Below, piece by piece: positions 9,887 to 52,083 of a DNA stretch of 64,000 nt. A program made the position numbers and the translations under genes. Location of the stretch: positions 147,169-211,168 of the IMG/VR virus record IMGVR_UViG_3300023181_000025. One strand, written 5' to 3'. Position 1 is the first letter of the stretch. The number at the start of each line of letters is the position of its first letter. Below the pieces are notes generated by a model. It was not told the DNA's origin and did not search any database. It was given only the letters and a program-made list of their open reading frames with translations.

Positions 9887-10041
9887 TTTATTATGAAAAA
9901 TATTTTTAAAATTATTGGAATTATTTTTATATCTCCTTTTATGGTTATCCATTTTATCGCGTGGTATTCATTCAATTCATTTCTTGGGGGAACATTAAAC
10001 TATAAAAAATGGGGGCACGCTCCATTAAATCTTCCTTAATT

Positions 10042-11202
10042 ATGAATAATCTAACGCAATACCCCGAGCCGCCGAACCCTGACGCCGTGATACTCGGGCC
10101 GGGAGGGAGCTTCAAAGTGCCGGAGAGCTTAGCAGGCTTTCAAGGATGGGCATTTTATGAAGACGGAAGAGGCTGGGATGGGCCATATTGGCAACACGGA
10201 GAGTGCCCCCGAGCCATCTACGCCGCACGCCGCGATTCGGACGTGGTGAGGCTGAATATTCCTGATCACCTCGACATTGACGGCGATCCTCCGGACCATC
10301 GGACGTATAGGCACGAGGAAGCAGAAGATTTACCGCCGGAAAAAACATCGCCCGTAGCAAAGAGCGGCCTGCCGCCATACTTTCAGGAAGATGTCACGGT
10401 TGAGGAGCACGAGGCCGACTTGGGGGCGTTTTTAAATGCCATGGAGAAGCAGCACCCGAAAGACGTTTTTCGTGAGTGCGACAAGTGCGAGTCTTTAGGT
10501 GCTCAACTCGTCTGTGGAGACACCGGGCAGTGCTGCGCGGAGAACGGCGAACGGAAATTCCTGCATCTGGCTGCACAAGGATTGAAGCCGCTTACCGACG
10601 AGGAAGTTCAAAGGTGGGCTGACACGGCATTCACCAAGTTTACCACCCCACCCCTTGCCGGTTCAGGGAAGGGGGAGGCGGGGACTCCGAGAGGAATGAG
10701 GGAGTGTCACCGCACGTTCATGGAAATGTTCCCATGGCTGGACAAACAATTCTCCAGCTACGACGAGTGGATAGTTTCCGACGACGACCACGCACGATCA
10801 TTCCGCCAAGGATGGGCGGCCAACACCAGGGCTCTCGCCTCAGCGCGGGCGGAGATCGAGGACATTAGAACCTTCGCGCAGAAATTACAGGATGATGTTC
10901 GTTCACTTTGCGGAACGCCGGTCGGAGTCTCGACCCGAGACGGCATTTCCTTGCTCAAGGCAGAGATCGAGAGGCTGAGGGGTGCGCCAGTCACAATCGA
11001 CGGTAGGAACTTTAAGACGCCGCTTGAGGCCTCCCTGCATCTGCTTTGGCTGCTGCAACGCCTGAGCTATTACGAGCCGCACCGCGAAGGAATGCCCGCA
11101 GACGGCCCACGATTCCGCCAAGGGATCATTGAGTCCCGCAAACTCCTTTCCACCATTGGATACATGAAGGAAGCCACCAACGCGGGAGGCTCCGGTGAGT
11201 GA
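10042..11202 (+). CDS. Mosaic hypothetical protein on a GC-rich island
   Basis: Visibly higher GC than flanks; N-terminal domain resembles repeats of ORF 33244. Confidence 0.7.
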   Translation: MNNLTQYPEPPNPDAVILGPGGSFKVPESLAGFQGWAFYEDGRGWDGPYWQHGECPRAIYAARRDSDVVRLNIPDHLDIDGDPPDHRTYRHEEAEDLPPEKTSPVAKSGLPPYFQEDVTVEEHEADLGAFLNAMEKQHPKDVFRECDKCESLGAQLVCGDTGQCCAENGERKFLHLAAQGLKPLTDEEVQRWADTAFTKFTTPPLAGSGKGEAGTPRGMRECHRTFMEMFPWLDKQFSSYDEWIVSDDDHARSFRQGWAANTRALASARAEIEDIRTFAQKLQDDVRSLCGTPVGVSTRDGISLLKAEIERLRGAPVTIDGRNFKTPLEASLHLLWLLQRLSYYEPHREGMPADGPRFRQGIIESRKLLSTIGYMKEATNAGGSGE

Positions 11203-11617
11203 GCTTCTGCCATGCCCGTTTTGCGGAAACAGTGCTATAATTAGAAAATATGATGGTGAATGGTATATCCGCTGTTACGGAAATGGAAGTTGTCATGCTA
11301 ATCCGTTTTACGCAGATCCAGACCGAGAAATAGTTTGTAAACGCTGGAACACCCGCGCCCCGTCAGCCGGTGAAGCAGAGGTTAGGGGAGAGCTAAAGCG
11401 AATCAAAGTCCACTTTGCCGAAGATATGGTTGACAAACGAGAGGAAATGCGCGCATTACGTTCGATAGCTGATAAACTTGAAGAGGCGGGAACATTTCTT
11501 CGTCAAGATTTAGAATTAGAATTAATTGATAGAAGACAAATTAATACCTCTAAATGGTGCTCCCTAGTAAATTGGAACGAAGTTTTGGCCGAATACGCTG
11601 TGTTTAAAAACGAGTAA
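11195..11617 (+). CDS. Lar-family restriction alleviation zinc-finger protein with coiled-coil tail
   Basis: ELLPCPFCG...YIRC...C...WNTRA. Confidence 0.75.
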   Translation: MSELLPCPFCGNSAIIRKYDGEWYIRCYGNGSCHANPFYADPDREIVCKRWNTRAPSAGEAEVRGELKRIKVHFAEDMVDKREEMRALRSIADKLEEAGTFLRQDLELELIDRRQINTSKWCSLVNWNEVLAEYAVFKNE

Positions 11618-13348: not shown

Positions 13349-13669
13349 ATGATTGAAAGAAAGCAAATATCTTACCAAGAATTAAAGAAGCTCTACCGCG
13401 AAAGGCGCGGATTTATGTTGGCTTTCCCTGTTCCCTCTAGTGGCAAAGGAGTTGAAGAGGTTTCCCAAAAAATGATTGACACTGGAGTGTGTTCCGTGCA
13501 TGCTGAATTCGTAACAAATTACAGGACTAAAAGTGGCGGGGAAATGTGGTTTTTTGTTTACCCACCCGATTCAGATTTCAACAGCGCAAAATTTTACGAA
13601 GATTCTCGCGCCGCACAATTCCACAACATACAATCAGATACTTTGCTAGGATACTTTAATGAGCATTAA
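13349..13669 (+). CDS. Hypothetical protein
   Basis: Tiling. Confidence 0.65.
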   Translation: MIERKQISYQELKKLYRERRGFMLAFPVPSSGKGVEEVSQKMIDTGVCSVHAEFVTNYRTKSGGEMWFFVYPPDSDFNSAKFYEDSRAAQFHNIQSDTLLGYFNEH

Positions 13670-14219
13670 TTATATAAATGAGGAAAAACTAGAGCGGGCA
13701 AAACAATTTGCCATTGACGCCCATGAGAGCATTGGGCAAATGAGGAAATATGGCGAGGAAAAGTATTACTTTCATCCTTTACGCGTAGCTGAAACGATTA
13801 AGGCGGTAGGAGGAACGGAAAATATGATCATTGCAGCAAAATTCCACGACATTCTGGAAGACGTGCTTCCATTAAACTCAAGTTACGGACCAGACAAAAT
13901 TCTTAGATTATTTGGGCCAAAAGTTCTTAGTCTGGTTTTTGAACTAACGGACGTATTCACCAAAGAGGCCCACCCACAACATAATAGGAAGTTCCGAAAG
14001 GTGTTTGAAGCGGCAAGACTAGCTTCTATTAGCGATGAAGCAAAAATTATTAAAATGGCGGACATTGCTGATAACAGCCGAAATCTTGACACGTTCCCCG
14101 GATTTAATAGGGTTTGGATTGAAGAAAAAGCAAGACTGATTCCCCTTTTGCTACCAAGCGAAGGGCGTTGGCTGGAAGCTTACACAACTCTTTTGGGAAA
14201 ATGCGGGAAAATTAAATAA
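13659..14219 (+). CDS. RelA/SpoT-type HD-domain hydrolase (small alarmone hydrolase/Mesh1-like)
   Basis: FA..AH...Q.RK....Y..HP..VA, HDILED, ELTD, IKMAD..DN. Confidence 0.88.
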   Translation: MSINYINEEKLERAKQFAIDAHESIGQMRKYGEEKYYFHPLRVAETIKAVGGTENMIIAAKFHDILEDVLPLNSSYGPDKILRLFGPKVLSLVFELTDVFTKEAHPQHNRKFRKVFEAARLASISDEAKIIKMADIADNSRNLDTFPGFNRVWIEEKARLIPLLLPSEGRWLEAYTTLLGKCGKIK

Positions 14220-20192: not shown

Positions 20193-20342
20193 ATGAGCCT
20201 ACACACAATTAAACTTCGTTCAAATTATTGGCTTGCCCGGCTTTTTAAGCTTGCAGGGCTATGTTATAAATGCAAGATTACGTCATTGAACTTCACGCGA
20301 CATGGACAAGGGGTTTGCCCAAAGTGCGGGAAACGAGTTTGA
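20193..20342 (+). CDS. Small zinc-ribbon protein (49 aa)
   Basis: CYKC...CPKCG; not in ORF track. Confidence 0.6.
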   Translation: MSLHTIKLRSNYWLARLFKLAGLCYKCKITSLNFTRHGQGVCPKCGKRV

Positions 20343-20353
20343 ACATTATTTAT

Positions 20354-20887
20354 ATGAAATTTGCAGATATTCCAAAATTTCCACATTCTTTTTATAGAAT
20401 TAATGTAGATCTAGACCATGTAGAACGCGCACTGGAGCACTGGGATGAACCTGCATCGGGGAGCCCATTAATCCTTAATCCTGAATGGCAACGGGGCCAC
20501 GTCTGGACAAAAAAGCAACAAACTTCATATATGGAATATATGCTTAAGGGCGGGAACACGGGAAAAGAAATTTATTTTAATTGTTCTTCTTGGGGTGGAG
20601 GTTTCAATACTCCTATTTATTGCGTTGATGGTCTTCAGCGTCTAAGTGCGGCCCTTGCCTTTATCCGTAACGAGATTCCCGCTTTTGGGTTTTTGTGTAA
20701 AGATTACGAAGACAGGCTCAGAATGTCTGGCGTGGGGTTCTTTTTCAACATGCTTCAAGTTAAAAGCAAGAAAGAACTTCTCAATATTTATATTGATTTT
20801 AATAGCGGCGGCACACCTCACAAACCAAAAGAAATTGCCCGCATTATCGAATTGCAAAAAAATACAGATCCATCCGAAACAGTATGA
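20354..20887 (+). CDS. DUF262 (ParB/GmrS-like) domain protein
   Basis: LNPEWQRGHVW, VDGLQRL, F..FNSGG. Confidence 0.85.
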   Translation: MKFADIPKFPHSFYRINVDLDHVERALEHWDEPASGSPLILNPEWQRGHVWTKKQQTSYMEYMLKGGNTGKEIYFNCSSWGGGFNTPIYCVDGLQRLSAALAFIRNEIPAFGFLCKDYEDRLRMSGVGFFFNMLQVKSKKELLNIYIDFNSGGTPHKPKEIARIIELQKNTDPSETV

Positions 20888-23569: not shown

Positions 23570-23962
23570 ATGAAAACTAAGCAAGAGATCATCGAAGAAA
23601 CGGCAAATTATTACAATCTGAGTAATCGGGCAGTTACTCTTTCAGGTAAATGTAAATATTCAACCAGTGACGGAAGACAATGTGCCGTAGGTAGGTGCTT
23701 TACTGATAAAGAGGCTGACAGCTTTTGTGATTTTGACGGGCCGGTGAGTTTTGTAAACTCAACCCTAAAAGTCAACGCAAATAAAGAGCTTGATGATATT
23801 TTGAAAGAGGAATATCGCGGCCATTCGATTATTTTTTGGATGGATCTTCAAAGTTTTCATGATACACAGGAGAACTGGAATGATGATGGAATTTCTGAGG
23901 TTGGGCTGAAAGAAAAAGCAGAACTTCTTGAAAAGTATGTTGACAAACAAGAGGGAAACTAA
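23570..23962 (+). CDS. Paralog family A member
   Basis: IIEETA.YYN..NR; CAVGRC; FWMDLQSFHD. Confidence 0.85.
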   Translation: MKTKQEIIEETANYYNLSNRAVTLSGKCKYSTSDGRQCAVGRCFTDKEADSFCDFDGPVSFVNSTLKVNANKELDDILKEEYRGHSIIFWMDLQSFHDTQENWNDDGISEVGLKEKAELLEKYVDKQEGN

Positions 23963-23974
23963 TACTTTATTCAC

Positions 23975-24334
23975 ATGACCAAGCAATCAATTATTGAAGA
24001 GACCGCCGCCTATTACAATTTGGGAAATCGTTCGGTTTGCCCTAAAAAGGGCGGGTGCCTCTATTTGAACCCCGAGGGAAAAATGTGTGCTTTTGGTAGG
24101 TGCATGACGGAGGAAGGTCTGGACGCTTATAAGAATTCGGGCGATTACGTTAGAGCCTTAAGTGTTGGAGATAGCGTTGACCATCTTTTGCTGGCAGATT
24201 ATAAGGGCCATTCTGTAGAGTTTTGGACCGACATCCAAATGTTCCATGACATGGAAAATCATTGGACTGAGACCGGCCTTTCCTCTAAAGGCGAAGAATT
24301 TAAGAAAAAACTTCTCAAAAAGTATGTTGACTAA
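23975..24334 (+). CDS. Paralog family A member
   Basis: CAFGRCMT; FWTDIQMFHD. Confidence 0.85.
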   Translation: MTKQSIIEETAAYYNLGNRSVCPKKGGCLYLNPEGKMCAFGRCMTEEGLDAYKNSGDYVRALSVGDSVDHLLLADYKGHSVEFWTDIQMFHDMENHWTETGLSSKGEEFKKKLLKKYVD

Positions 24335-24360
24335 CTGCGCTTTTTAGTGTAACTTCTTTT

Positions 24361-24450
24361 CATAGCGCAACACAGGGGACCGCGCCCCTCCGAAAATTGT
24401 AGTGATACGGTGACTACTAAACTAAGCTTCTGCGAGATTTAGTTTGAGGA
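24361..24450 (+). ncRNA. Candidate small structured RNA
   Basis: Promoter TTGACT-N17-TAACTT at 24327; no ORF; three hairpins. Confidence 0.45.
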
Positions 24451-24499
24451 ATAAAGAGGTTGACAGGGAAAAGAAAAAACGATAGATTGTAAAAACAAA

Positions 24500-24573
24500 G
24501 GGGCGATAGCTTAACCGGTGAAAGCAGCGGTTTCATAAACCGTTGAGTGAGGGTTCGACCCCCTCTCGCCCTA
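24500..24573 (+). tRNA. tRNA with CAT anticodon, probably tRNA-Ile2 (lysidine-modified); elongator Met not excluded
   Basis: Cloverleaf GGGGCGA/TCGCCCT, GCGGT-TTCATAA-ACCGT, GAGGG-TTCGACC-CCCTC; no initiator features; tilS nearby; CCA not encoded. Confidence 0.92.
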
Positions 24574-24574
24574 C

Positions 24575-25099
24575 TTATAAAATTCTTTCAGGGTTGTGTA
24601 ATTCCATATGGCAATTAGAGCACAATAAATCACATTTGTCTATTTCTAGCAATAGAGAGGCCCAATTTGTATTGGAGAGTTTTCTAGAGTCCAGCTTAAA
24701 AGTTTTTTCTTTTGGATCTCTGTGATGGAAACACAGGGCGGAATAATTTTTATCGTATCCGCATATTTTGCATTTCCCGCCCTTCAAATCAACTAAAGTT
24801 TTCTTTCTGTCTAAAGAAACGAGTTTTTGACGTTCGTTATTCTTTCTATTTTGCTCTTGTTTATTATCTTTATAGAACTGCTTGCAACTACATTCGTTAG
24901 AGCAAAACTTTAGTTGATTCCCCTCTAATCTTTTGGAACACATTAAACAAAACGTATCGGGAGAATGAGTTTTTTTAGTATTTAATCCATGTTTTCTAAG
25001 CCAATACCTTATATTGGTTTGACTGCAATTAAGTTTAATTGCGATTTGATAAGTAGACATGCCTTGTTCAATTAATTCTTTTAATGTTTCATAGCTCAT
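24575..25099 (-). CDS. HTH + zinc finger + HNH endonuclease
   Basis: GMSTYQIA..L.CS...IRYWL; C..C...FCS..C; CKICGY...FHHRDP...LCSNCH..H. Confidence 0.9.
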   Translation of the reverse strand: MSYETLKELIEQGMSTYQIAIKLNCSQTNIRYWLRKHGLNTKKTHSPDTFCLMCSKRLEGNQLKFCSNECSCKQFYKDNKQEQNRKNNERQKLVSLDRKKTLVDLKGGKCKICGYDKNYSALCFHHRDPKEKTFKLDSRKLSNTNWASLLLEIDKCDLLCSNCHMELHNPERIL

Positions 25100-25192
25100 A
25101 AAGTTATTTACACAAAAAATATAAATTGTGAACTAGTATGTTTGACTTTTTTATTTCTTGACTTTTCTCCATAATTTTCAATACTGCCCCCC

Positions 25193-25834
25193 ATGATCAA
25201 ATTCATCCCCGGCACAATCCCCCATGATCCCGTTTTCATGATCAGCGGCGGCGTGGATAGCGTGGCGGCGGCCCACTGGCTAGCCACCAAGGCGCGCAAA
25301 AAGATTTCGGCTATCCACTTCAACCATAACGTCCAACCCGCGAACGAAGCAATGCAGACGGCGGTGTGCGAGCTTTGCGCGTCTCTTGACATTCCCCTTA
25401 TGATCGTGAAGAATACGACAGCTTGCAAACTGAATGAGGCCAGTCTTAGGCATTGGAGACTAACAGTTTTGAAAGGCATTAAGGGAAACTTTCTAAGTGC
25501 TCATCATGTAGGGGATGCAATTGAAAATTATTTAAACAACTGTTTGAAAGGCTGTCCAGAATATAAGCCAATTAAAGAAAAAACTGAATTCGATGGTTTT
25601 ACAATTTCCCACCCATTCCTTACCACTCGCAAGAGCGATTTCGAAAAATACGCAAGACAAAACAATCTAGACCAATTCATCTGCCCCGACCCCACTAACG
25701 CCGATACTTCCTTTAATCGAAACTGGATTAGAAAACTAATTAGCGAATCGGAAGATCGCGGCAAAGGGTTGGAAAAAGTAGTCTTAAAGAAATTTTACAA
25801 AAAGAGAATTGACATTGGCGGGGGATTTGAATAG
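25193..25834 (+). CDS. tilS: tRNA(Ile)-lysidine synthase, catalytic domain only
   Basis: SGGVDS PP-loop, HFNH, AHH..D..E, DPTN......RN.IR. Confidence 0.9.
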   Translation: MIKFIPGTIPHDPVFMISGGVDSVAAAHWLATKARKKISAIHFNHNVQPANEAMQTAVCELCASLDIPLMIVKNTTACKLNEASLRHWRLTVLKGIKGNFLSAHHVGDAIENYLNNCLKGCPEYKPIKEKTEFDGFTISHPFLTTRKSDFEKYARQNNLDQFICPDPTNADTSFNRNWIRKLISESEDRGKGLEKVVLKKFYKKRIDIGGGFE

Positions 25835-31451: not shown

Positions 31452-31506
31452 AGCTTTTTTGCAGAAAAAAGTTGACAAATTAATTTACAACGAATAGATT
31501 ATCCCC

Positions 31507-38733: not shown

Positions 38734-39111
38734 ATGAACGTTAAAAGGAAAACAGATGTTATCCGCGAAACTGCGGAATTTTACAATCTTAATAATAGAG
38801 GTGTGGATGGTAATGGCCATTACCATTATCTAACCGATGATAAAAAGTGCGGCGTAGGTCGCTGCATGACGGATGAAGCCCTACAAAGGTCTCTGGAAGG
38901 ATGGCCGTCTATTGGATCTTTTGTCCAGTGGCAGATTGGCAGTGAATCTTATTTAAAAATTTTTAAACCCCAATATAAAATTGATGATATTCAATTTTGG
39001 GAAGACATTCAGGGCTTTCACGACGTAGATGACTATTGGAATGAAACTGGTCTTTCGGCAGAAGGTAAGAAAAAATATCAACGCCTTCTTGACAAATACC
39101 TCAATCAATAA
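38734..39111 (+). CDS. Paralog family A member
   Basis: CGVGRCMT; FWEDIQGFHD. Confidence 0.85.
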   Translation: MNVKRKTDVIRETAEFYNLNNRGVDGNGHYHYLTDDKKCGVGRCMTDEALQRSLEGWPSIGSFVQWQIGSESYLKIFKPQYKIDDIQFWEDIQGFHDVDDYWNETGLSAEGKKKYQRLLDKYLNQ

Positions 39112-39908: not shown

Positions 39909-40322
39909 ATGAAAACTAAAATTAAAGTCATTAACGAAACTGCGGCACATTACAATTCTAATAATCGTGGAAACGATGGATTGAGCTGTGTGTATGATGC
40001 GGGTGATGGGAACAGGTGTGCGGTAGGTAGGTGCATGACGCCCGAGGCATTGGAAAAGTCTTTGTTTGTTTTGCATAGTAATTATGCTTGGGGAAGCGTA
40101 AGAAACATTGAGGCCAACATTGAAAACCATTTGTTTCAATTCCCAGAAGGAGCGAAAAGTTTTCTTGATCTTCTTAGGGAAGAATACCAAATTGATGATC
40201 TTAAATTTTGGAAAGATCTCCAGCAATTTCATGATGAGGGGTCTAATTGGGACGACCAAGGCCTTTCCGAGCGAGGGAAAAAGGCTTATAAGATTCTGCT
40301 TGACCAATATAAGGGTCAATGA
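39909..40322 (+). CDS. Paralog family A member
   Basis: CAVGRCMT; FWKDLQQFHD. Confidence 0.85.
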   Translation: MKTKIKVINETAAHYNSNNRGNDGLSCVYDAGDGNRCAVGRCMTPEALEKSLFVLHSNYAWGSVRNIEANIENHLFQFPEGAKSFLDLLREEYQIDDLKFWKDLQQFHDEGSNWDDQGLSERGKKAYKILLDQYKGQ

Positions 40323-40661: not shown

Positions 40662-40874
40662 ATGAAACCGCGTTATATTATCTTCTGGCATGGCGTGACG
40701 CCAAAGATTGAAGAAAAAATTAAAGAAATCTGCGGTGATAAAATGGAATTTGCTGATAGTTATTTTTATTCTGGAAGTATTGACAATTTCATTGACAAAT
40801 GGCTAGGAGGGCCTATTATGGTAACAGATCAGTGGATCGCAGTCACACAATATGGTAGGTTTGATGCGCGATAG
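40662..40874 (+). CDS. Hypothetical protein
   Basis: Tiling. Confidence 0.6.
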   Translation: MKPRYIIFWHGVTPKIEEKIKEICGDKMEFADSYFYSGSIDNFIDKWLGGPIMVTDQWIAVTQYGRFDAR

Positions 40875-40899
40875 ATAGTAAATAGATTTTTATAAAAAC

Positions 40900-40981
40900 G
40901 GTCCGTTGCCCAAATTGGTAAAGGGAACATCTTTAAACGGTGTCGCGTAACAGCTTCTCGGTTCGAGTCCGAGGCGGACTA
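40900..40981 (+). tRNA. tRNA-Leu(TAA)
   Basis: GGTCCGT/GCGGACT acceptor, ACATC-TTTAAAC-GGTGT, long variable arm, CTCGG-TTCGAGT-CCGAG; CCA not encoded. Confidence 0.92.
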
Positions 40982-41596
40982 CTTATTTTTACCTTTGTTT
41001 TTGCCGCAATAAGTTTCCGTAAGGGAATGGCAATTAGGACAAAGAAATCGAAGGTTTGACAGTTCATTGTTGGAGTTGTCCCCATCTATATGGTCCAAGT
41101 GAAGAGAGAGTTTAATTCCTCGCCATTCTGTAAGGAAACACTCATCACATATATAAGGAATAAGACCGTATTTAAGAATTTTTCGTTTTAGATTTGTGCT
41201 ATGGAGAGTTCCATCTTTAACAAAAGATTCCTCTATAGATTTTTCTGGTGCATATATATTTGTCTTATTTTTTAAATGCCCCTGACCAGTAAAATGGGAG
41301 GTGTCCAAGCACAGTGATTTTATTCTATTATAAAAAATTCTATAATTGCCTCCCCTAGGAACAATGTCACATTTCTTTAAAACCTCGGCGACTGAAAAAC
41401 TTTCAGCAACATATTGAGAAAATAATTCATTATCAACTTTTGCCGTTGAATGTTTGGATTTAATTTTATCCTTGCTGGTCTTTCCTTTGCACCAGTCCAT
41501 AACAGTTGAGCGATTTACCCCTGTTTGTCTGGATATTTCACAGTAATTTAAACCCTTTTCCCTTAATTTTAATACATTTTCAAATAATTCATTCAT
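40979..41596 (-). CDS. HTH + HNH endonuclease
   Basis: GLNY.EISR.TGVNRSTV..W; C..C...W....L.LHLDHIDG...NN...NLR.LCPNCHS.T. Confidence 0.92.
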   Translation of the reverse strand: MNELFENVLKLREKGLNYCEISRQTGVNRSTVMDWCKGKTSKDKIKSKHSTAKVDNELFSQYVAESFSVAEVLKKCDIVPRGGNYRIFYNRIKSLCLDTSHFTGQGHLKNKTNIYAPEKSIEESFVKDGTLHSTNLKRKILKYGLIPYICDECFLTEWRGIKLSLHLDHIDGDNSNNELSNLRFLCPNCHSLTETYCGKNKGKNK

Positions 41597-41725
41597 GATG
41601 AAATTAATTACACTCACCATGGTGAAATGTGAACTAGGGCAATTTCTCTGTTGACATTCACCCCATCTTAACCCATTCTATCCAAAGATGAGCTAGGAAC
41701 AAAAGCCTTTAAATATCAAATCAAC

Positions 41726-42562: not shown

Positions 42563-42931
42563 ATGACTAAGCAAGCAATTATCGAAGAAACTGCCGCATT
42601 TTACAATAGCGGTAATCGCGGGCAAACCTCTATTGGCTATATTTATGTAAATAAATATGGTAACAAATGTGGGGTAGGTCGCTGTATGACAGATGACGGC
42701 ATCGCAGTGTTTGGGGGATTTGGGGATGATGTTATTGAACTTGAAAAAAAGGTTAAGGATTCCTATAGCGGCCTTGATGATATTTTGAAAGAGGAATATC
42801 GCGGCCATTCGGTTGATTTCTGGGCGGACATCCAAGGGTTTCATGACAATAGCGAGAATTGGGATAAAGAAGGAATTTCGTTTCGGGGTTTAGCATCTAA
42901 AGCATTCCTTCTTGAAAAATATTCCAGTTGA
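42563..42931 (+). CDS. Paralog family A member
   Basis: CGVGRCMT; FWADIQGFHD. Confidence 0.85.
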   Translation: MTKQAIIEETAAFYNSGNRGQTSIGYIYVNKYGNKCGVGRCMTDDGIAVFGGFGDDVIELEKKVKDSYSGLDDILKEEYRGHSVDFWADIQGFHDNSENWDKEGISFRGLASKAFLLEKYSS

Positions 42932-42961: not shown

Positions 42962-43345
42962 ATGAACAAAGAATCAATTATCGAAGAGACGGCGAATTAT
43001 TACAATTCGGAGAATCGTTCACTTAATAGTGGTGGGACCGGATGCTCGTATCTTGGCTCAAATGGAACTTGGTGCGGTTTCTCTAGGTGTTGCAAAAATG
43101 ACGCCAAGACTATAGAGTCTCTTGAGGCTATGGATGATGTAGTAGGAACCCTGAATTGTTATGAACTTGATAAAAATGAGATTTCGTATGAAGAACTTCT
43201 CCAAGATCAATACAAAGGACACGAATTGGAATTTTGGAGAGACGTTCAGTTTCTCCATGACGGAAAAGAAAATTGGAATAAGTCTGGTCTGAGTGAAAAG
43301 GGGCAAAAATTTAAGGATAGGCTTATTGGAAAGTGGCGAGAGTAA
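42962..43345 (+). CDS. Paralog family A member
   Basis: CGFSRC; FWRDVQFLHD. Confidence 0.85.
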   Translation: MNKESIIEETANYYNSENRSLNSGGTGCSYLGSNGTWCGFSRCCKNDAKTIESLEAMDDVVGTLNCYELDKNEISYEELLQDQYKGHELEFWRDVQFLHDGKENWNKSGLSEKGQKFKDRLIGKWRE

Positions 43346-44609: not shown

Positions 44610-45011
44610 ATGCCCTGCAATTGTGATTATATGGAGCCAAGCGAGAGTGAATTTCAATCCCAGCTTACTTGTCAGCACATTCAATATGTTCTAAAAACTT
44701 TGGACCGCCCTGTTCCACAATGGATCAAGGACGCCGCGAAAAATAGTTACGGGAATCCCAGCCGACTTAACGAGGCCGTAGTGACTCTTTGTGACTTGTG
44801 CCATGAACTTACCACCGAGCAAGAGGGCGCAATCATTTATGACGGGCGCAATCCAAGGGCGCGAGCACTCGCTGATTGGTGGGATCGCCATAAGGCGGCA
44901 GACAAAGCGCGAAAGAAAAAAGAACGGGAAGAGAAAAATAAACTAAAAGCAATTGCCTCGGCGAAAGACAAGCTAACCGCTGACGAGAAAAAGGCTTTGG
45001 GAATTGCGTGA
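44610..45011 (+). CDS. Hypothetical phage protein
   Basis: MPC.CDY...LC...WW..HK..D...KLT..EK.ALG. Confidence 0.75.
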   Translation: MPCNCDYMEPSESEFQSQLTCQHIQYVLKTLDRPVPQWIKDAAKNSYGNPSRLNEAVVTLCDLCHELTTEQEGAIIYDGRNPRARALADWWDRHKAADKARKKKEREEKNKLKAIASAKDKLTADEKKALGIA

Positions 45012-45053
45012 ATTCATATTGACAATTTGCTGCATATTGGATAATTTACACCC

Positions 45054-51775: not shown

Positions 51776-52042
51776 ATGGAAACAAAAATTCATTCACCCG
51801 CCGATATTGAAGTCGGCGCATATTATTTAGATCCAGATTTGAATCTTTTGCTTGGCGTCGGGAAAAGAAAAATCTTTACTTCGGACCAATTTCATTTTAA
51901 ATGTTTAGTTATTATGCAAGGGAACTGGAAGGGGCGCGTGATACAAGAGGGGTTGTGGGAAAACGGATTTCAAAAAATTGATGATCAATTAGCACAAGAA
52001 ATGTTGAGATGTGAAACAATTTTGATGGTCGCCAGACAATAA
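51776..52042 (+). CDS. Hypothetical protein
   Basis: Tiling. Confidence 0.6.
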   Translation: METKIHSPADIEVGAYYLDPDLNLLLGVGKRKIFTSDQFHFKCLVIMQGNWKGRVIQEGLWENGFQKIDDQLAQEMLRCETILMVARQ

Positions 52043-52083
52043 AACTTATTGACACGAGGGCTTGAATCTCTACAATTACGCCC

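What the first reader, a model, noticed from the sequence alone, without database searches (positions are those of the whole stretch)
24500..25136. tRNA/antisense-HNH cassette 1 with conserved boundary motifs
Seen: tRNA(CAT) ends at 24573 and an HTH-HNH gene on the opposite strand stops at 24575. The same architecture occurs at 40900-41637 with a dissimilar HNH protein. Both junctions read CTACTTAT (24571-78; 40979-86). Both tRNAs therefore have a G1-U72 pair and no CCA. Both HNH genes have the upstream motif CTAGTTCACA-N13/14-GTGTAA on the minus strand (25108-36; 41608-37). The shared junction is read in different frames (TAA-GTAG versus AAG-TAG), so it is conserved as DNA/RNA rather than protein. 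Known: free-standing homing endonucleases occur near phage tRNA genes (e.g. T4 SegB). Inference: a family of tRNA-3'-end-targeting HNH mobile units with defined ends and a dedicated promoter, possibly with antisense control between the tRNA and nuclease transcripts.
Basis: partly seen in the sequence, partly recalled or inferred. Interest (0 to 1): 0.8.

Follow-up and report, generated by a model that had tools for sequence, protein, structure and literature searches.

The report
Homing nuclease genes beside phage tRNAs
Two unrelated selfish nuclease genes each sit backwards against the end of a tRNA gene in a 211-kb phage genome and share one private promoter; this is a well-documented example of a known habit of phage homing endonucleases, not a new kind of element.

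Summary
tRNA(CAT) 24500-24573 and tRNA-Leu(UAA) 40900-40981 are each met head-on by a minus-strand HTH-HNH gene that stops within 2 nt of, or 3 nt inside, the tRNA 3' end. Both junctions read CTACTTAT. Both nuclease genes are preceded by CTAGTTCACA-N13/14-GTGTAA. That composite occurs only twice in the 211-kb contig.

These are free-standing HNH homing endonuclease genes of two families whose relatives live at phage tRNA genes. Empty alleles exist: tRNA(CAT) runs straight into the TilS-like gene. In one 98-99% identical genome pair, tRNA plus HNH is swapped as one block. PD-(D/E)XK and LAGLIDADG genes occupy the same antisense position elsewhere.

CTACTTAT is not an element end. It is the ancestral tRNA end (G1-U72, A73, C74) plus the lineage's usual TTAT trailer. 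Empty alleles read CTACCA-TTAT, and other tRNA-HNH pairs have other junctions.

The upstream motif looks like a sigma-70-type promoter for a leaderless mRNA. Its GTG/-10/ATG part travels with the HNH1 family across phages. CTAGTTCACA is private to this phage. Antisense control is untested.

Verdict: a new member of a known kind (T4 SegB, T5 F-Tfl).

The parts
24460..24488 (+). Promoter-like site of tRNA(CAT): TTGACA-N17-TAGATT. The -10 element ends 11 nt before the tRNA 5' end.
   Evidence: The tRNA-Leu gene has the same TAGATT at the same 11-nt distance.
24500..24573 (+). tRNA(CAT) with G1-U72 and A73, followed by C-TTAT instead of CCA. Probably tRNA-Ile2, the substrate of the adjacent TilS-like enzyme.
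   Evidence: Orthologues next to TilS-like genes appear.
24575..25099 (-). HNH1: a 174-aa HTH / zinc-ribbon / HNH homing endonuclease gene. Its TAA stop begins 2 nt after the tRNA discriminator.
   Evidence: It is 53% identical to the L038 orthologue, which also sits beside a tRNA(CAT).
25100..25136 (-). HNH1 promoter-like region: CTAG + TTCACA (-35-like, 25127-25136), a 16-nt spacer ending in GTG, TAAATA (-10-like, 25105-25110), then 5 nt to the ATG. This predicts a leaderless mRNA.
25158..25185 (+). Promoter-like site TTGACT-N16-AATACT that restarts plus-strand transcription into the TilS-like gene. The -10 element ends 7 nt before the ATG.
   Evidence: It is absent from empty alleles, where only 14-62 nt separate the tRNA from TilS.
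25193..25834 (+). TilS-like PP-loop ATPase (213 aa). This gene directly follows tRNA(CAT) in HNH-free relatives.
   Evidence: PF01171, 1e-26.
40861..40888 (+). Promoter-like site of tRNA-Leu: TTGATG-N16-TAGATT, 11 nt before the tRNA 5' end.
   Evidence: read from the sequence.
40900..40981 (+). tRNA-Leu(UAA), class II, with G1-U72 and A73, followed by C-TTAT instead of CCA.
   Evidence: 68.1 bits with the lineage model. Rfam misses it.
40979..41596 (-). HNH2: a 205-aa HTH_23 / HNH homing endonuclease gene (the ORF is open up to 41620). Its TAG stop is the complement of tRNA positions 71-73.
   Evidence: Homologues abut tRNAs in L013 (56% identity) and L093.
41597..41637 (-). HNH2 promoter-like region: CTAG + TTCACA (41628-41637), a 17-nt spacer ending in GTG, TAATTA (41605-41610), 5 nt, ATC, then ATG.

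Best explanation
Each locus holds a free-standing HNH homing endonuclease gene (HEG) lodged directly downstream of a phage tRNA gene and transcribed towards it. The two HEGs belong to different HNH families.

Shown here:
- Both proteins carry HNH catalytic motifs plus an N-terminal HTH.
- Relatives of both families sit at tRNA genes in many unrelated phages, most often convergent with the tRNA, with the stop codon at or inside the tRNA 3' end.
- Related phages have the same tRNA(CAT)-TilS locus without any nuclease gene.
- In one 98-99% identical genome pair, a 915-nt block (variant tRNA(CAT), antisense HNH1 orthologue, its promoter and a small ORF) replaces a 140-nt block (resident tRNA(CAT) plus spacer).

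Inferred from T4 SegB, SegF/SegG and T5 F-Tfl:
- The enzyme cuts the tRNA gene or its flank in a co-infecting relative that lacks it.
- Repair from the HEG-bearing genome then copies the HEG together with the neighbouring tRNA allele.

Expression: each HEG has its own promoter-like site of the type used throughout this phage region, namely a -35 element, 16-17 nt, a -10 element, then 5-7 nt to the ATG. There is no Shine-Dalgarno sequence, so the mRNA is predicted to be leaderless. The HEG promoters differ from the others in having a -35 that reads TTCACA instead of TTGACA and is preceded by CTAG. I infer a weak or separately timed promoter that keeps both nucleases under one control. A plus-strand promoter-like site after cassette 1 restarts transcription of the downstream gene; after cassette 2 there is only a -35-like TTGACA.

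The shared CTACTTAT is tRNA ancestry plus the lineage's usual 3' trailer, not a mobile-element terminus.
For: - HNH identity.
- tRNA association of both families: of the 18 non-self loci fetched with the two proteins, 13 hold tRNA genes, and in about 10 a tRNA lies within about 60 nt of the HNH ORF. Among 78 metagenomic HNH1 relatives, 19 are convergent with a tRNA at the stop, 11 of them tRNA(CAT).
- Orthologues at the same kind of tRNA: L038, 53% identity, beside tRNA(CAT). L013, 56% identity, beside tRNA(TAA), with the homologous junction ...CTAC-TGTTTTTACC against ...CTAC-TTATTTTTACC in the window.
- Empty alleles: L031/L032 and L029/L030.
- Block replacement, L038 against L029.
- Other nuclease folds in the same antisense position: PDDEXK_5 in L036 and LAGLIDADG_3 in L037; an unclassified 219-aa ORF in L033, absent from L034.
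- Enrichment: 15 of 200 tRNA 3' ends have an abutting antisense ORF, against 0.86% of random positions, p = 3e-10.
- Promoter reading: about 33 plus-strand genes have TTGACA-N17-(-10) ending 6-7 nt before the ATG, and none has TTCACA. The GTG-TAnnnW-N5-6-ATG part recurs before HNH1-family genes in many other phages.
- Precedents: SegB cuts inside tRNA genes at the T-loop motif, and its homologues cluster with tRNAs (PMC2330249, PMC13096335). T4 HEGs have their own non-early promoters, segD is antisense, and downstream-gene promoters are associated with HEGs (PMC2988022).
Against: - No cleavage, homing or transcript data exist for these proteins. No RNA run was listed.
- No HEG-free variant of this particular phage was found in the two other samples that hold it.
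- The empty alleles come from relatives whose TilS is only 44-55% identical, so nucleotide-level breakpoints for the window itself cannot be drawn.
- The L038/L029 block swap could be ordinary homologous recombination between flanks, with the HEG only a passenger.
- The promoter is inferred from sequence alone. Its -10 (TAAATA / TAATTA) lacks the usual final T and was not called by the consensus scan.
- 147 kb of the contig lie outside the window, so CTAGTTCACA without GTGTAA could be common there.
Confidence: 0.75

Rival explanations
1. One reading: one family of mobile units with fixed DNA termini (CTACTTAT ... TGTGAACTAG) that inserts precisely at tRNA 3' ends.
For: Both boundary strings are identical in the two cassettes. 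Both occupied tRNAs lack the CA of CCA, whereas the HEG-free orthologous tRNA(CAT) and tRNA-Leu(UAA) genes of the closest relatives (L029, L031, L037, L038, L039, L043, L046) encode CCA.
Against: - The left 'terminus' is explained by ancestry. HEG-free orthologues read CTACCA followed by TTAT, TTAA or TTTAT.
- G1-U72/A73 is seen in 31 of 124 tRNAs.
- Orthologous HNH-tRNA pairs have other junctions: ACCA-TTATATT in L038, AC-TTTAAT in L039, AC-TGTT in L013, CCA-ATAT in L093.
- The right string is not found at HNH relatives in other phages.
- There are no flanking direct or inverted repeats.
- The two proteins are unrelated outside generic HTH/HNH motifs.
Confidence: 0.08
2. The shared CTAGTTCACA...GTG region is an operator. 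One or both HTH-HNH proteins, or a phage repressor, bind it and shut off nuclease expression, as I-TevI does at an operator resembling its homing site.
For: - Identical non-consensus bases in both promoters (CTAG, C at -35 position 3, GTG) go beyond what promoter function alone requires.
- Both proteins have an N-terminal HTH.
- HNH1 relatives in other phages carry a conserved palindrome ATTATGA-N6-7-TCATAAT at the same place, with arm changes that keep the symmetry between L039 and L042.
- The I-TevI precedent is described in PMC2988022.
Against: - The promoter regions show no significant similarity to the tRNA genes or to empty-allele flanks, the likely homing sites (p > 0.18 in every comparison).
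- The two HTH domains are only about 19% identical, so a common site for both is not expected.
- There is no binding data.
Confidence: 0.2
3. The convergent arrangement is a regulatory device. HNH transcripts run antisense through the tRNA (or tRNA transcription collides with HNH transcription), so that the level of one is tuned by the other.
For: - No terminator-like site lies between the converging genes.
- The ORF stops lie 2 nt after, or 3 nt inside, the tRNA.
- The convergent orientation is preferred in the HNH1 family, 19 against 6.
Against: - HEG-like genes of related phages are also on the minority strand when no tRNA is nearby (L030 718-1500, L031 7137-7928). Antisense orientation therefore looks like a general way of silencing HEGs (compare T4 segD, PMC2988022).
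- Many family members are co-directional inside tRNA arrays.
- The antisense tRNA fold is no better than shuffles (z = -0.65 and +0.41).
- There is no RNA data.
Confidence: 0.15
4. The nucleases are kept because they help the phage. Like SegB in T6, they may trigger recombination that amplifies or diversifies the neighbouring tRNA genes against tRNA-targeting host defences.
For: PMC13096335 shows SegB-dependent amplification of a tRNA locus that rescues T6 from Septu. Here the block swap in L038/L029 exchanges one tRNA(CAT) for a different one, and the window region is rich in anti-restriction-type genes (a Lar-like protein and a GmrSD_N domain).
Against: No tandem amplification of the tRNA region is seen in the window or in the assembled reads. 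This is an added benefit rather than an alternative to homing.
Confidence: 0.15

Closest known systems
T4/T6 SegB (a GIY-YIG free-standing homing endonuclease in the tRNA gene cluster)
   Same: It is a free-standing nuclease gene lodged between tRNA genes. It is present in some relatives and absent in others. It has its own promoter. It targets tRNA genes and carries neighbouring tRNA genes along (PMC2330249, PMC13096335, PMC2988022).
   Different: It has a different catalytic fold (GIY-YIG, not HNH) and is co-directional with the T4 tRNAs. Its target, the T-loop motif GGTTCRANTCC, is known by experiment, whereas the targets here are unknown.
[quoted passage not shown]
   Same: They are HNH-family site-specific endonucleases whose ORFs lie within a phage tRNA cluster (cited in PMC2330249).
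   Different: I did not compare sequences, because the T5 proteins were not retrieved. An arrangement that is antisense and abuts a tRNA 3' end has not been reported for them, as far as I know.
T4 segD and the intron endonuclease I-TevI (control of HEG expression)
   Same: segD is antisense to its neighbours and thought to be barely expressed. I-TevI is driven by a dedicated promoter overlapped by an operator (PMC2988022). The two HNH genes here are likewise antisense and have a private promoter.
   Different: No operator-to-homing-site similarity was found here. The promoter type here is sigma-70-like and leaderless, not T4 middle or late.
I-Ssp6803I-type PD-(D/E)XK and LAGLIDADG homing endonucleases
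   Same: In relatives L036 and L037, genes of these families occupy the same position (antisense, abutting tRNA(CAT) or tRNA-Leu(UAA)) that the HNH genes occupy in the window.
   Different: They have different folds. I-Ssp6803I itself is intron-encoded in a cyanobacterial tRNA-fMet gene (from my own knowledge), whereas these are free-standing.
Integrase-driven elements that insert into tRNA gene 3' ends
   Same: The insertion point is at a tRNA 3' end. In L033 a 16-nt piece of the tRNA 3' end is duplicated on both sides of the insert.
   Different: The window cassettes have no integrase and no flanking tRNA-fragment repeat.

Membership tests
Free-standing HNH homing endonuclease gene | Protein has the HNH (beta-beta-alpha-metal) nuclease motif | tested here: met
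   HNH1 matches phrog_2255 (1e-22) and three further HNH PHROGs. HNH2 matches phrog_10822 (8e-45), with weak Pfam HNH and HNH_3 hits below the gathering score. The His/Asn/His and CxxC motifs are readable in the translations.
Free-standing HNH homing endonuclease gene | The gene is intergenic, not inside an intron or intein | tested here: met
   Both ORFs lie between a tRNA gene and the next protein gene. No group I or group II intron was found by Rfam.
Free-standing HNH homing endonuclease gene | Sporadic presence or absence at an otherwise conserved locus | tested here: met
   The tRNA(CAT)-TilS locus is empty in L029-L032 and L037. It holds HNH1 in the window, L038, L039 and L042, and PDDEXK_5 in L036. 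L038 and L029 are 98-99% identical on both flanks.
Free-standing HNH homing endonuclease gene | Site-specific cleavage of the allele that lacks the gene | not testable with these tools
   This needs purified protein and substrate DNA.
Free-standing HNH homing endonuclease gene | Unidirectional transfer with co-conversion of flanking markers | tested here: inconclusive
   The L038/L029 block replacement includes the whole neighbouring tRNA gene. That fits co-conversion, but direction and mechanism cannot be read from two sequences.
SegB-like tRNA-cluster endonuclease | GIY-YIG catalytic domain | tested here: not met
   No GIY-YIG hit was found; both proteins are HNH.
SegB-like tRNA-cluster endonuclease | Gene located at phage tRNA genes | tested here: met
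SegB-like tRNA-cluster endonuclease | Recognition of the T-loop coding motif GGTTCRANTCC | not testable with these tools
   Both window tRNAs contain GGTTCGA, but whether it is recognised is unknown.
Integrase-type island at a tRNA 3' end | Integrase gene and direct repeats of the tRNA 3' end at both borders | tested here: not met
   Each cassette holds only the HNH ORF. No tRNA-fragment repeat was found.
Sigma-70-type promoter giving a leaderless mRNA (the phage's general early type) | -35 and -10 hexamers 16-18 nt apart, with the -10 ending 5-8 nt before the ATG and no Shine-Dalgarno sequence | tested here: inconclusive
   The geometry matches about 33 plus-strand promoters of the window. 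However, the -35 is TTCACA and the -10 is TAAATA / TAATTA, lacking the final T, and the consensus scan did not call either site. No transcript start data exist.

The most novel reading that the evidence does not exclude
In a broad group of large phages, tRNA 3' ends may be a common docking site for homing nucleases of at least three folds (HNH, PD-(D/E)XK, LAGLIDADG). On this reading the nuclease gene is always set antisense, with its last codons anchored in the tRNA end. tRNA and nuclease then travel as one composite cassette that swaps whole tRNA alleles between near-identical genomes. Within one genome, unrelated nucleases are brought under a single private promoter or operator (here CTAGTTCACA...GTG). 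Loss of the encoded CA of CCA would be the change that makes the carrier's own tRNA gene uncuttable.
Probability: 0.2. Interest if true: 0.55.

Novelty: new member of a known kind. Interest (0 to 1): 0.35.

Why it matters
Homing endonucleases at phage tRNA genes are known from T4 and T5. Recent work (PMC13096335) shows that they can reshape tRNA loci to defeat tRNA-cleaving host defences.

This locus adds a clean comparative case in an uncultivated 211-kb phage from leaf litter:
- two unrelated HNH genes under one private promoter;
- a recurrent antisense arrangement that abuts the tRNA end, shared by several nuclease folds;
- a near-isogenic genome pair in which a tRNA allele and its nuclease are exchanged together.

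The case also offers concrete substrates for specificity tests: empty alleles with CCA against occupied alleles without it. It sharpens an existing picture and does not open a new question.

Tried and rejected
1. Close relatives among isolated phages: none by megablast. The helicase is under 40% identical to anything isolated.
2. An HEG-free variant of this very phage: contigs from three leaf-litter samples show only the occupied allele and no joint that skips the HNH.
3. Transcript evidence: no RNA run was listed.
5. The motif as a T4-type late promoter: CTAAATA precedes the HEG-like genes of relatives. It is not enriched in the window (17 against 15 expected), and GTGTAA alone is not enriched either.
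6. Loss of CCA as a mark of occupied alleles: it looks suggestive among the closest relatives, but there is no association over 200 tRNAs (Fisher p = 0.28). HNH1 relatives abut tRNAs both with and without CCA.
7. G1-U72 as a consequence of the cassette: rejected. It is present in HEG-free orthologues and in a quarter of the tRNAs sampled.
8. The antisense tRNA as a terminator or special structure: folds are no better than shuffles. The 107-nt spacer upstream of tRNA(CAT) also folds no better than shuffles.
9. Operator resembling the homing site: not significant. The 12/15 match of ATTGTGAACTAGTAT to the L031 tRNA-TilS spacer scored no better than shuffled controls.
10. Flanking repeats or att-like duplication: none.
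11. CRP-like site: TGTGA is only a half-site, and the second half does not match. This was read from the sequence and is my own judgement.
12. Doubt about the tRNA-Leu call, because Rfam is silent: resolved by a lineage covariance model.
Full report
**Origin of the window.**
The window is the last 64 kb (contig positions 147169-211168) of IMGVR_UViG_3300023181_000025, a 211,168-bp viral contig. It comes from a leaf-litter metagenome. It has no close relative among isolated phages. Almost all genes are on the plus strand. Apart from frame-shadow ORFs that overlap plus-strand genes, the two HNH genes are the only sizeable minus-strand ORFs I could identify as genes.

**Check of the observation.**
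- tRNAs. ARAGORN finds two tRNAs, tRNA(CAT) at 24500-24574 and tRNA-Leu(TAA) at 40900-40982. Its ends include C74, so the discriminators are at 24573 and 40981. Rfam confirms the first tRNA but not the second, even at E<=1. I therefore built a covariance model from 11 orthologous phage tRNA-Leu(UAA) genes. It scores the window sequence at 68.1 bits, E 8e-18, and the sequence folds as a cloverleaf.
- Nuclease genes. The converging ORFs are 24575..25099 (174 aa) and 40979..41620. Both are HNH endonucleases, but of different PHROG families (phrog_2255 and phrog_10822). Both have N-terminal HTH hits, and they have no significant similarity to each other.
- Motifs. CTACTTAT is at both junctions. 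CTAGTTCACA occurs exactly twice in the window, both times upstream of an HNH gene. The composite motif occurs twice in the whole contig. It has only four other hits in all of IMG/VR; the one I read lies inside coding sequence, none has a tRNA nearby, and the number is no more than a rough chance estimate allows.

One correction: HNH2 probably starts at 41596, not 41620.

**What the genes are.**
- Relatives of both proteins in IMG/VR are embedded in phage tRNA arrays or abut single tRNAs.
- The best HNH2 homologue (L013, 56% identity, from a 452-kb contig) is convergent with a tRNA(TAA). Its junction is homologous to the window's (...CTAC-TGTTTTTACC against ...CTAC-TTATTTTTACC). A 1-nt difference lets its ORF run on into the antisense tRNA.
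- L093 has an HTH-HNH2-like gene that reads into a suppressor tRNA.
- A metagenome scan with an HNH1 alignment returned 78 non-self loci. In 19 of them a convergent tRNA lies at the stop: 11 CAT, 4 Gly, 2 Arg, 1 Ile-UAU and 1 Leu-UAA. In 6 a tRNA is co-directional.

**Empty alleles and block exchange.**
- The gene after cassette 1 (25193-25834) is a TilS-like PP-loop protein. Its homologues (44-55% identity) occur on contigs of about 200 kb.
- In L031/L032 and L029/L030 a tRNA(CAT) is followed after 14 or 62 nt by the TilS-like gene, with no nuclease between them.
- Other relatives are occupied. L038 carries an HNH1 orthologue (53% identity). L039 and L042 carry a shorter HNH1. L036 carries a PDDEXK_5 gene. 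L037 carries a LAGLIDADG_3 gene at tRNA-Leu(UAA). All of these are antisense and end within about 10 nt of the tRNA end, or overlap it by a few nt.
- L033 and L034 encode identical TilS proteins. They differ by an antisense 219-aa ORF inserted into the 3' acceptor strand of a tRNA-like gene, with a 16-nt duplication.
- The most informative pair is L038 and L029, which are 99.1% and 98.4% identical on the two flanks. In L038 a 915-nt block replaces a 140-nt block of L029. The 915-nt block holds a different 94-nt tRNA(CAT), the antisense HNH1, its promoter, a plus-strand promoter and a 65-aa ORF. The 140-nt block holds a 77-nt tRNA(CAT) plus spacer. The breakpoints are at the tRNA 5' end and at the TilS start codon.
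- Over all fetched loci, 15 of 200 distinct tRNAs have an abutting antisense ORF of at least 100 aa, against 0.86% of random positions (p = 3e-10). Some of these loci were fetched through the HNH genes, so the ratio is somewhat inflated.

**The left 'boundary motif'.**
- HEG-free orthologues of both tRNAs end in CTACCA followed by TTAT, TTAA or TTTAT. G1-U72, A73 and the TTAT-type trailer are therefore lineage features.
- G1-U72 occurs in 31 of 124 tRNAs in the first set of loci.
- The window differs from these orthologues only in lacking the CA of CCA at both tRNAs.
- Among the closest relatives, the HEG-free orthologues all encode CCA and several occupied alleles do not. Over 200 tRNAs there is no association (p = 0.28), and HNH1 relatives abut tRNAs of both kinds. 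The meaning of the CA loss is open.
- Orthologous tRNA-HNH pairs have different junction strings, and no repeats flank the cassettes.
- CTACTTAT is therefore not an element terminus.

**The upstream motif.**
- About 33 plus-strand genes in the window are preceded by TTGACA, about 17 nt, and a -10 hexamer that ends 6-7 nt before the ATG. None has a Shine-Dalgarno sequence (my reading of the listed upstream sequences). The region therefore appears to be transcribed from many sigma-70-type promoters that give leaderless mRNAs.
- The HNH upstream regions have the same geometry: TTCACA, 16 or 17 nt, TAAATA or TAATTA, then 5 nt to the ATG. In cassette 2 the aligned position holds ATC, and the ATG is the next codon. 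Similarity between the two regions runs from CTAG to the start codon.
- No plus-strand promoter has TTCACA or the preceding CTAG.
- The part GTG / -10 / 5-6 nt / ATG recurs before HNH1-family genes in many unrelated metagenomic phages. There it is often preceded by a palindrome ATTATGA-N6-7-TCATAAT.
- The closest full-length HNH1 (L235) has TTGACA-N16-TAAATA-N5-ATG and shares no other gene with the window.
- I conclude, by inference only, that the -10/start module travels with the HNH1 family, and that CTAGTTCACA is a feature of this phage acquired by both nuclease genes. HNH2 relatives lack the motif.
- A test for similarity between the promoter regions and the tRNA or empty-allele sequences, which an I-TevI-style operator would predict, was negative.

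**Mechanism.**
- Shown: the identity of the proteins, their association with tRNA ends, presence/absence polymorphism, and exchange of a tRNA+HNH block.
- Inferred from SegB, SegF/G and the T5 enzymes (PMC2330249, PMC2988022, PMC13096335): cleavage of HEG-free tRNA loci in mixed infection and repair-mediated copying with co-conversion of the tRNA; low or delayed expression from the private promoter; and restart of downstream transcription from the plus-strand promoter-like site after cassette 1.
- Antisense interplay with the tRNA is possible, because nothing terminator-like separates the genes. However, HEG-like genes of related phages are on the minority strand even away from tRNAs, the antisense fold is unremarkable, and no RNA data could be found.

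**Verdict.**
It is a good example of free-standing homing endonucleases at phage tRNA genes, a known kind. The claimed fixed ends are not supported. The shared private promoter and the recurrent antisense arrangement abutting the tRNA end across nuclease folds are the modestly new details.

Noticed in passing
window 24500-25834; L029-L034, L036-L114: tRNA(CAT) and a short (about 210 aa) TilS-like PP-loop gene are neighbours in many large-phage contigs. 467 candidate stretches in IMG/VR encode a relative of the protein, and a tRNA(CAT) lies within about 1 kb in many of the 80 loci kept. This suggests a phage-borne tRNA-Ile2/lysidine module for reading AUA. HNH1 relatives also abut tRNA-Ile(UAU).
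   Followed up: partly
window, about 33 intergenic sites, for example 31470-31506, 45010-45053, 52040-52083: Most plus-strand genes have TTGACA-N17-(-10) ending 6-7 nt before the ATG and no Shine-Dalgarno sequence. This implies widespread leaderless mRNAs. Relatives (L029, L031, L038) instead use a different repeated motif, TTAAAACCGAA-TAYAMT, about 6 nt before the ATG.
   Followed up: partly
window 23570-23962, 23975-24334, 38734-39111, 39909-40322, 42563-42931, 42962-43345: At least six paralogues of a small protein (about 120-137 aa, N-terminus ...IIEETAxYYN..NR..., phrog_31716, no Pfam hit) lie near both cassettes. Their function is unknown.
   Followed up: no
window 10001-11200: A GC-rich island (56% GC against about 38%) holds a 397-aa ORF with no Pfam or PHROG hit, followed by a Lar-like restriction-alleviation protein (11195-11617). 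Further on lie a GmrSD_N-domain protein (20270-20887) and an HD-domain protein (13659-14219).
   Followed up: partly
L034 5870-5990 and L033 5153-5273: A tRNA-Leu(UAA)-like gene that ARAGORN does not call carries an insertion of about 38 nt between anticodon positions 34 and 35. This is the classic site of the cyanobacterial and plastid tRNA-Leu group I intron, but the insertion is far too short to be one.
   Followed up: no
L037 2897-2988, L038 2084-2177, L039/L042 2495-2585, L043 2254: These are tRNAs with a CAT anticodon and a long variable arm (91-94 nt, class-II-like). Several share an identical D arm and anticodon arm but have different acceptor stems. They are the tRNAs that accompany HNH1 in L038, L039 and L042.
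   Followed up: no
L238-L307 and L039/L042, about 15-45 nt upstream of the HNH1-family start codons: A conserved palindrome ATTATGA-N6-7-TCATAAT precedes HNH1-family genes in many unrelated metagenomic phages. Arm changes between L039 and L042 keep the symmetry. It is a candidate operator and is absent from the window.
   Followed up: partly
window 24571-24583 and 25044-25056: A 13-nt inverted copy (12 of 13 nt) of the tRNA-end/trailer string lies inside the 5' part of HNH1. The 5' and 3' parts of the HNH1 mRNA could therefore pair. It may be chance.
   Followed up: no
window 24327-24462: A promoter-like site, TTGACT-N14-GTGTAA (-10 TAACTT), lies on the plus strand and is followed by 107 nt without an ORF before the tRNA(CAT) promoter. 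The fold is no better than shuffles, and Rfam has no hit.
   Followed up: partly
window 40900-40981: Rfam's tRNA model does not report this tRNA-Leu(UAA) even at E<=1, although it detects its orthologues in L029, L031 and L037 at 51-59 bits. A lineage model scores it at 68 bits.
   Followed up: yes
L013 3992-4492; L093 2236-2877; L235 317-892: In several relatives the HNH reading frame lacks a stop at the tRNA end and continues for 19-66 nt through the antisense tRNA. The position of the stop codon relative to the tRNA is therefore fluid.
   Followed up: partly
L051 3890-3975 against L046 3891-3974: A second occupied/empty pair exists for the L033-type element. The tRNA-Leu(UAA) 3' end reads ...GGCTAG-AGACAGGAATCA in L051 and ...GGCTACCA in L046. 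A 236-aa antisense ORF abuts it in L051.
   Followed up: no
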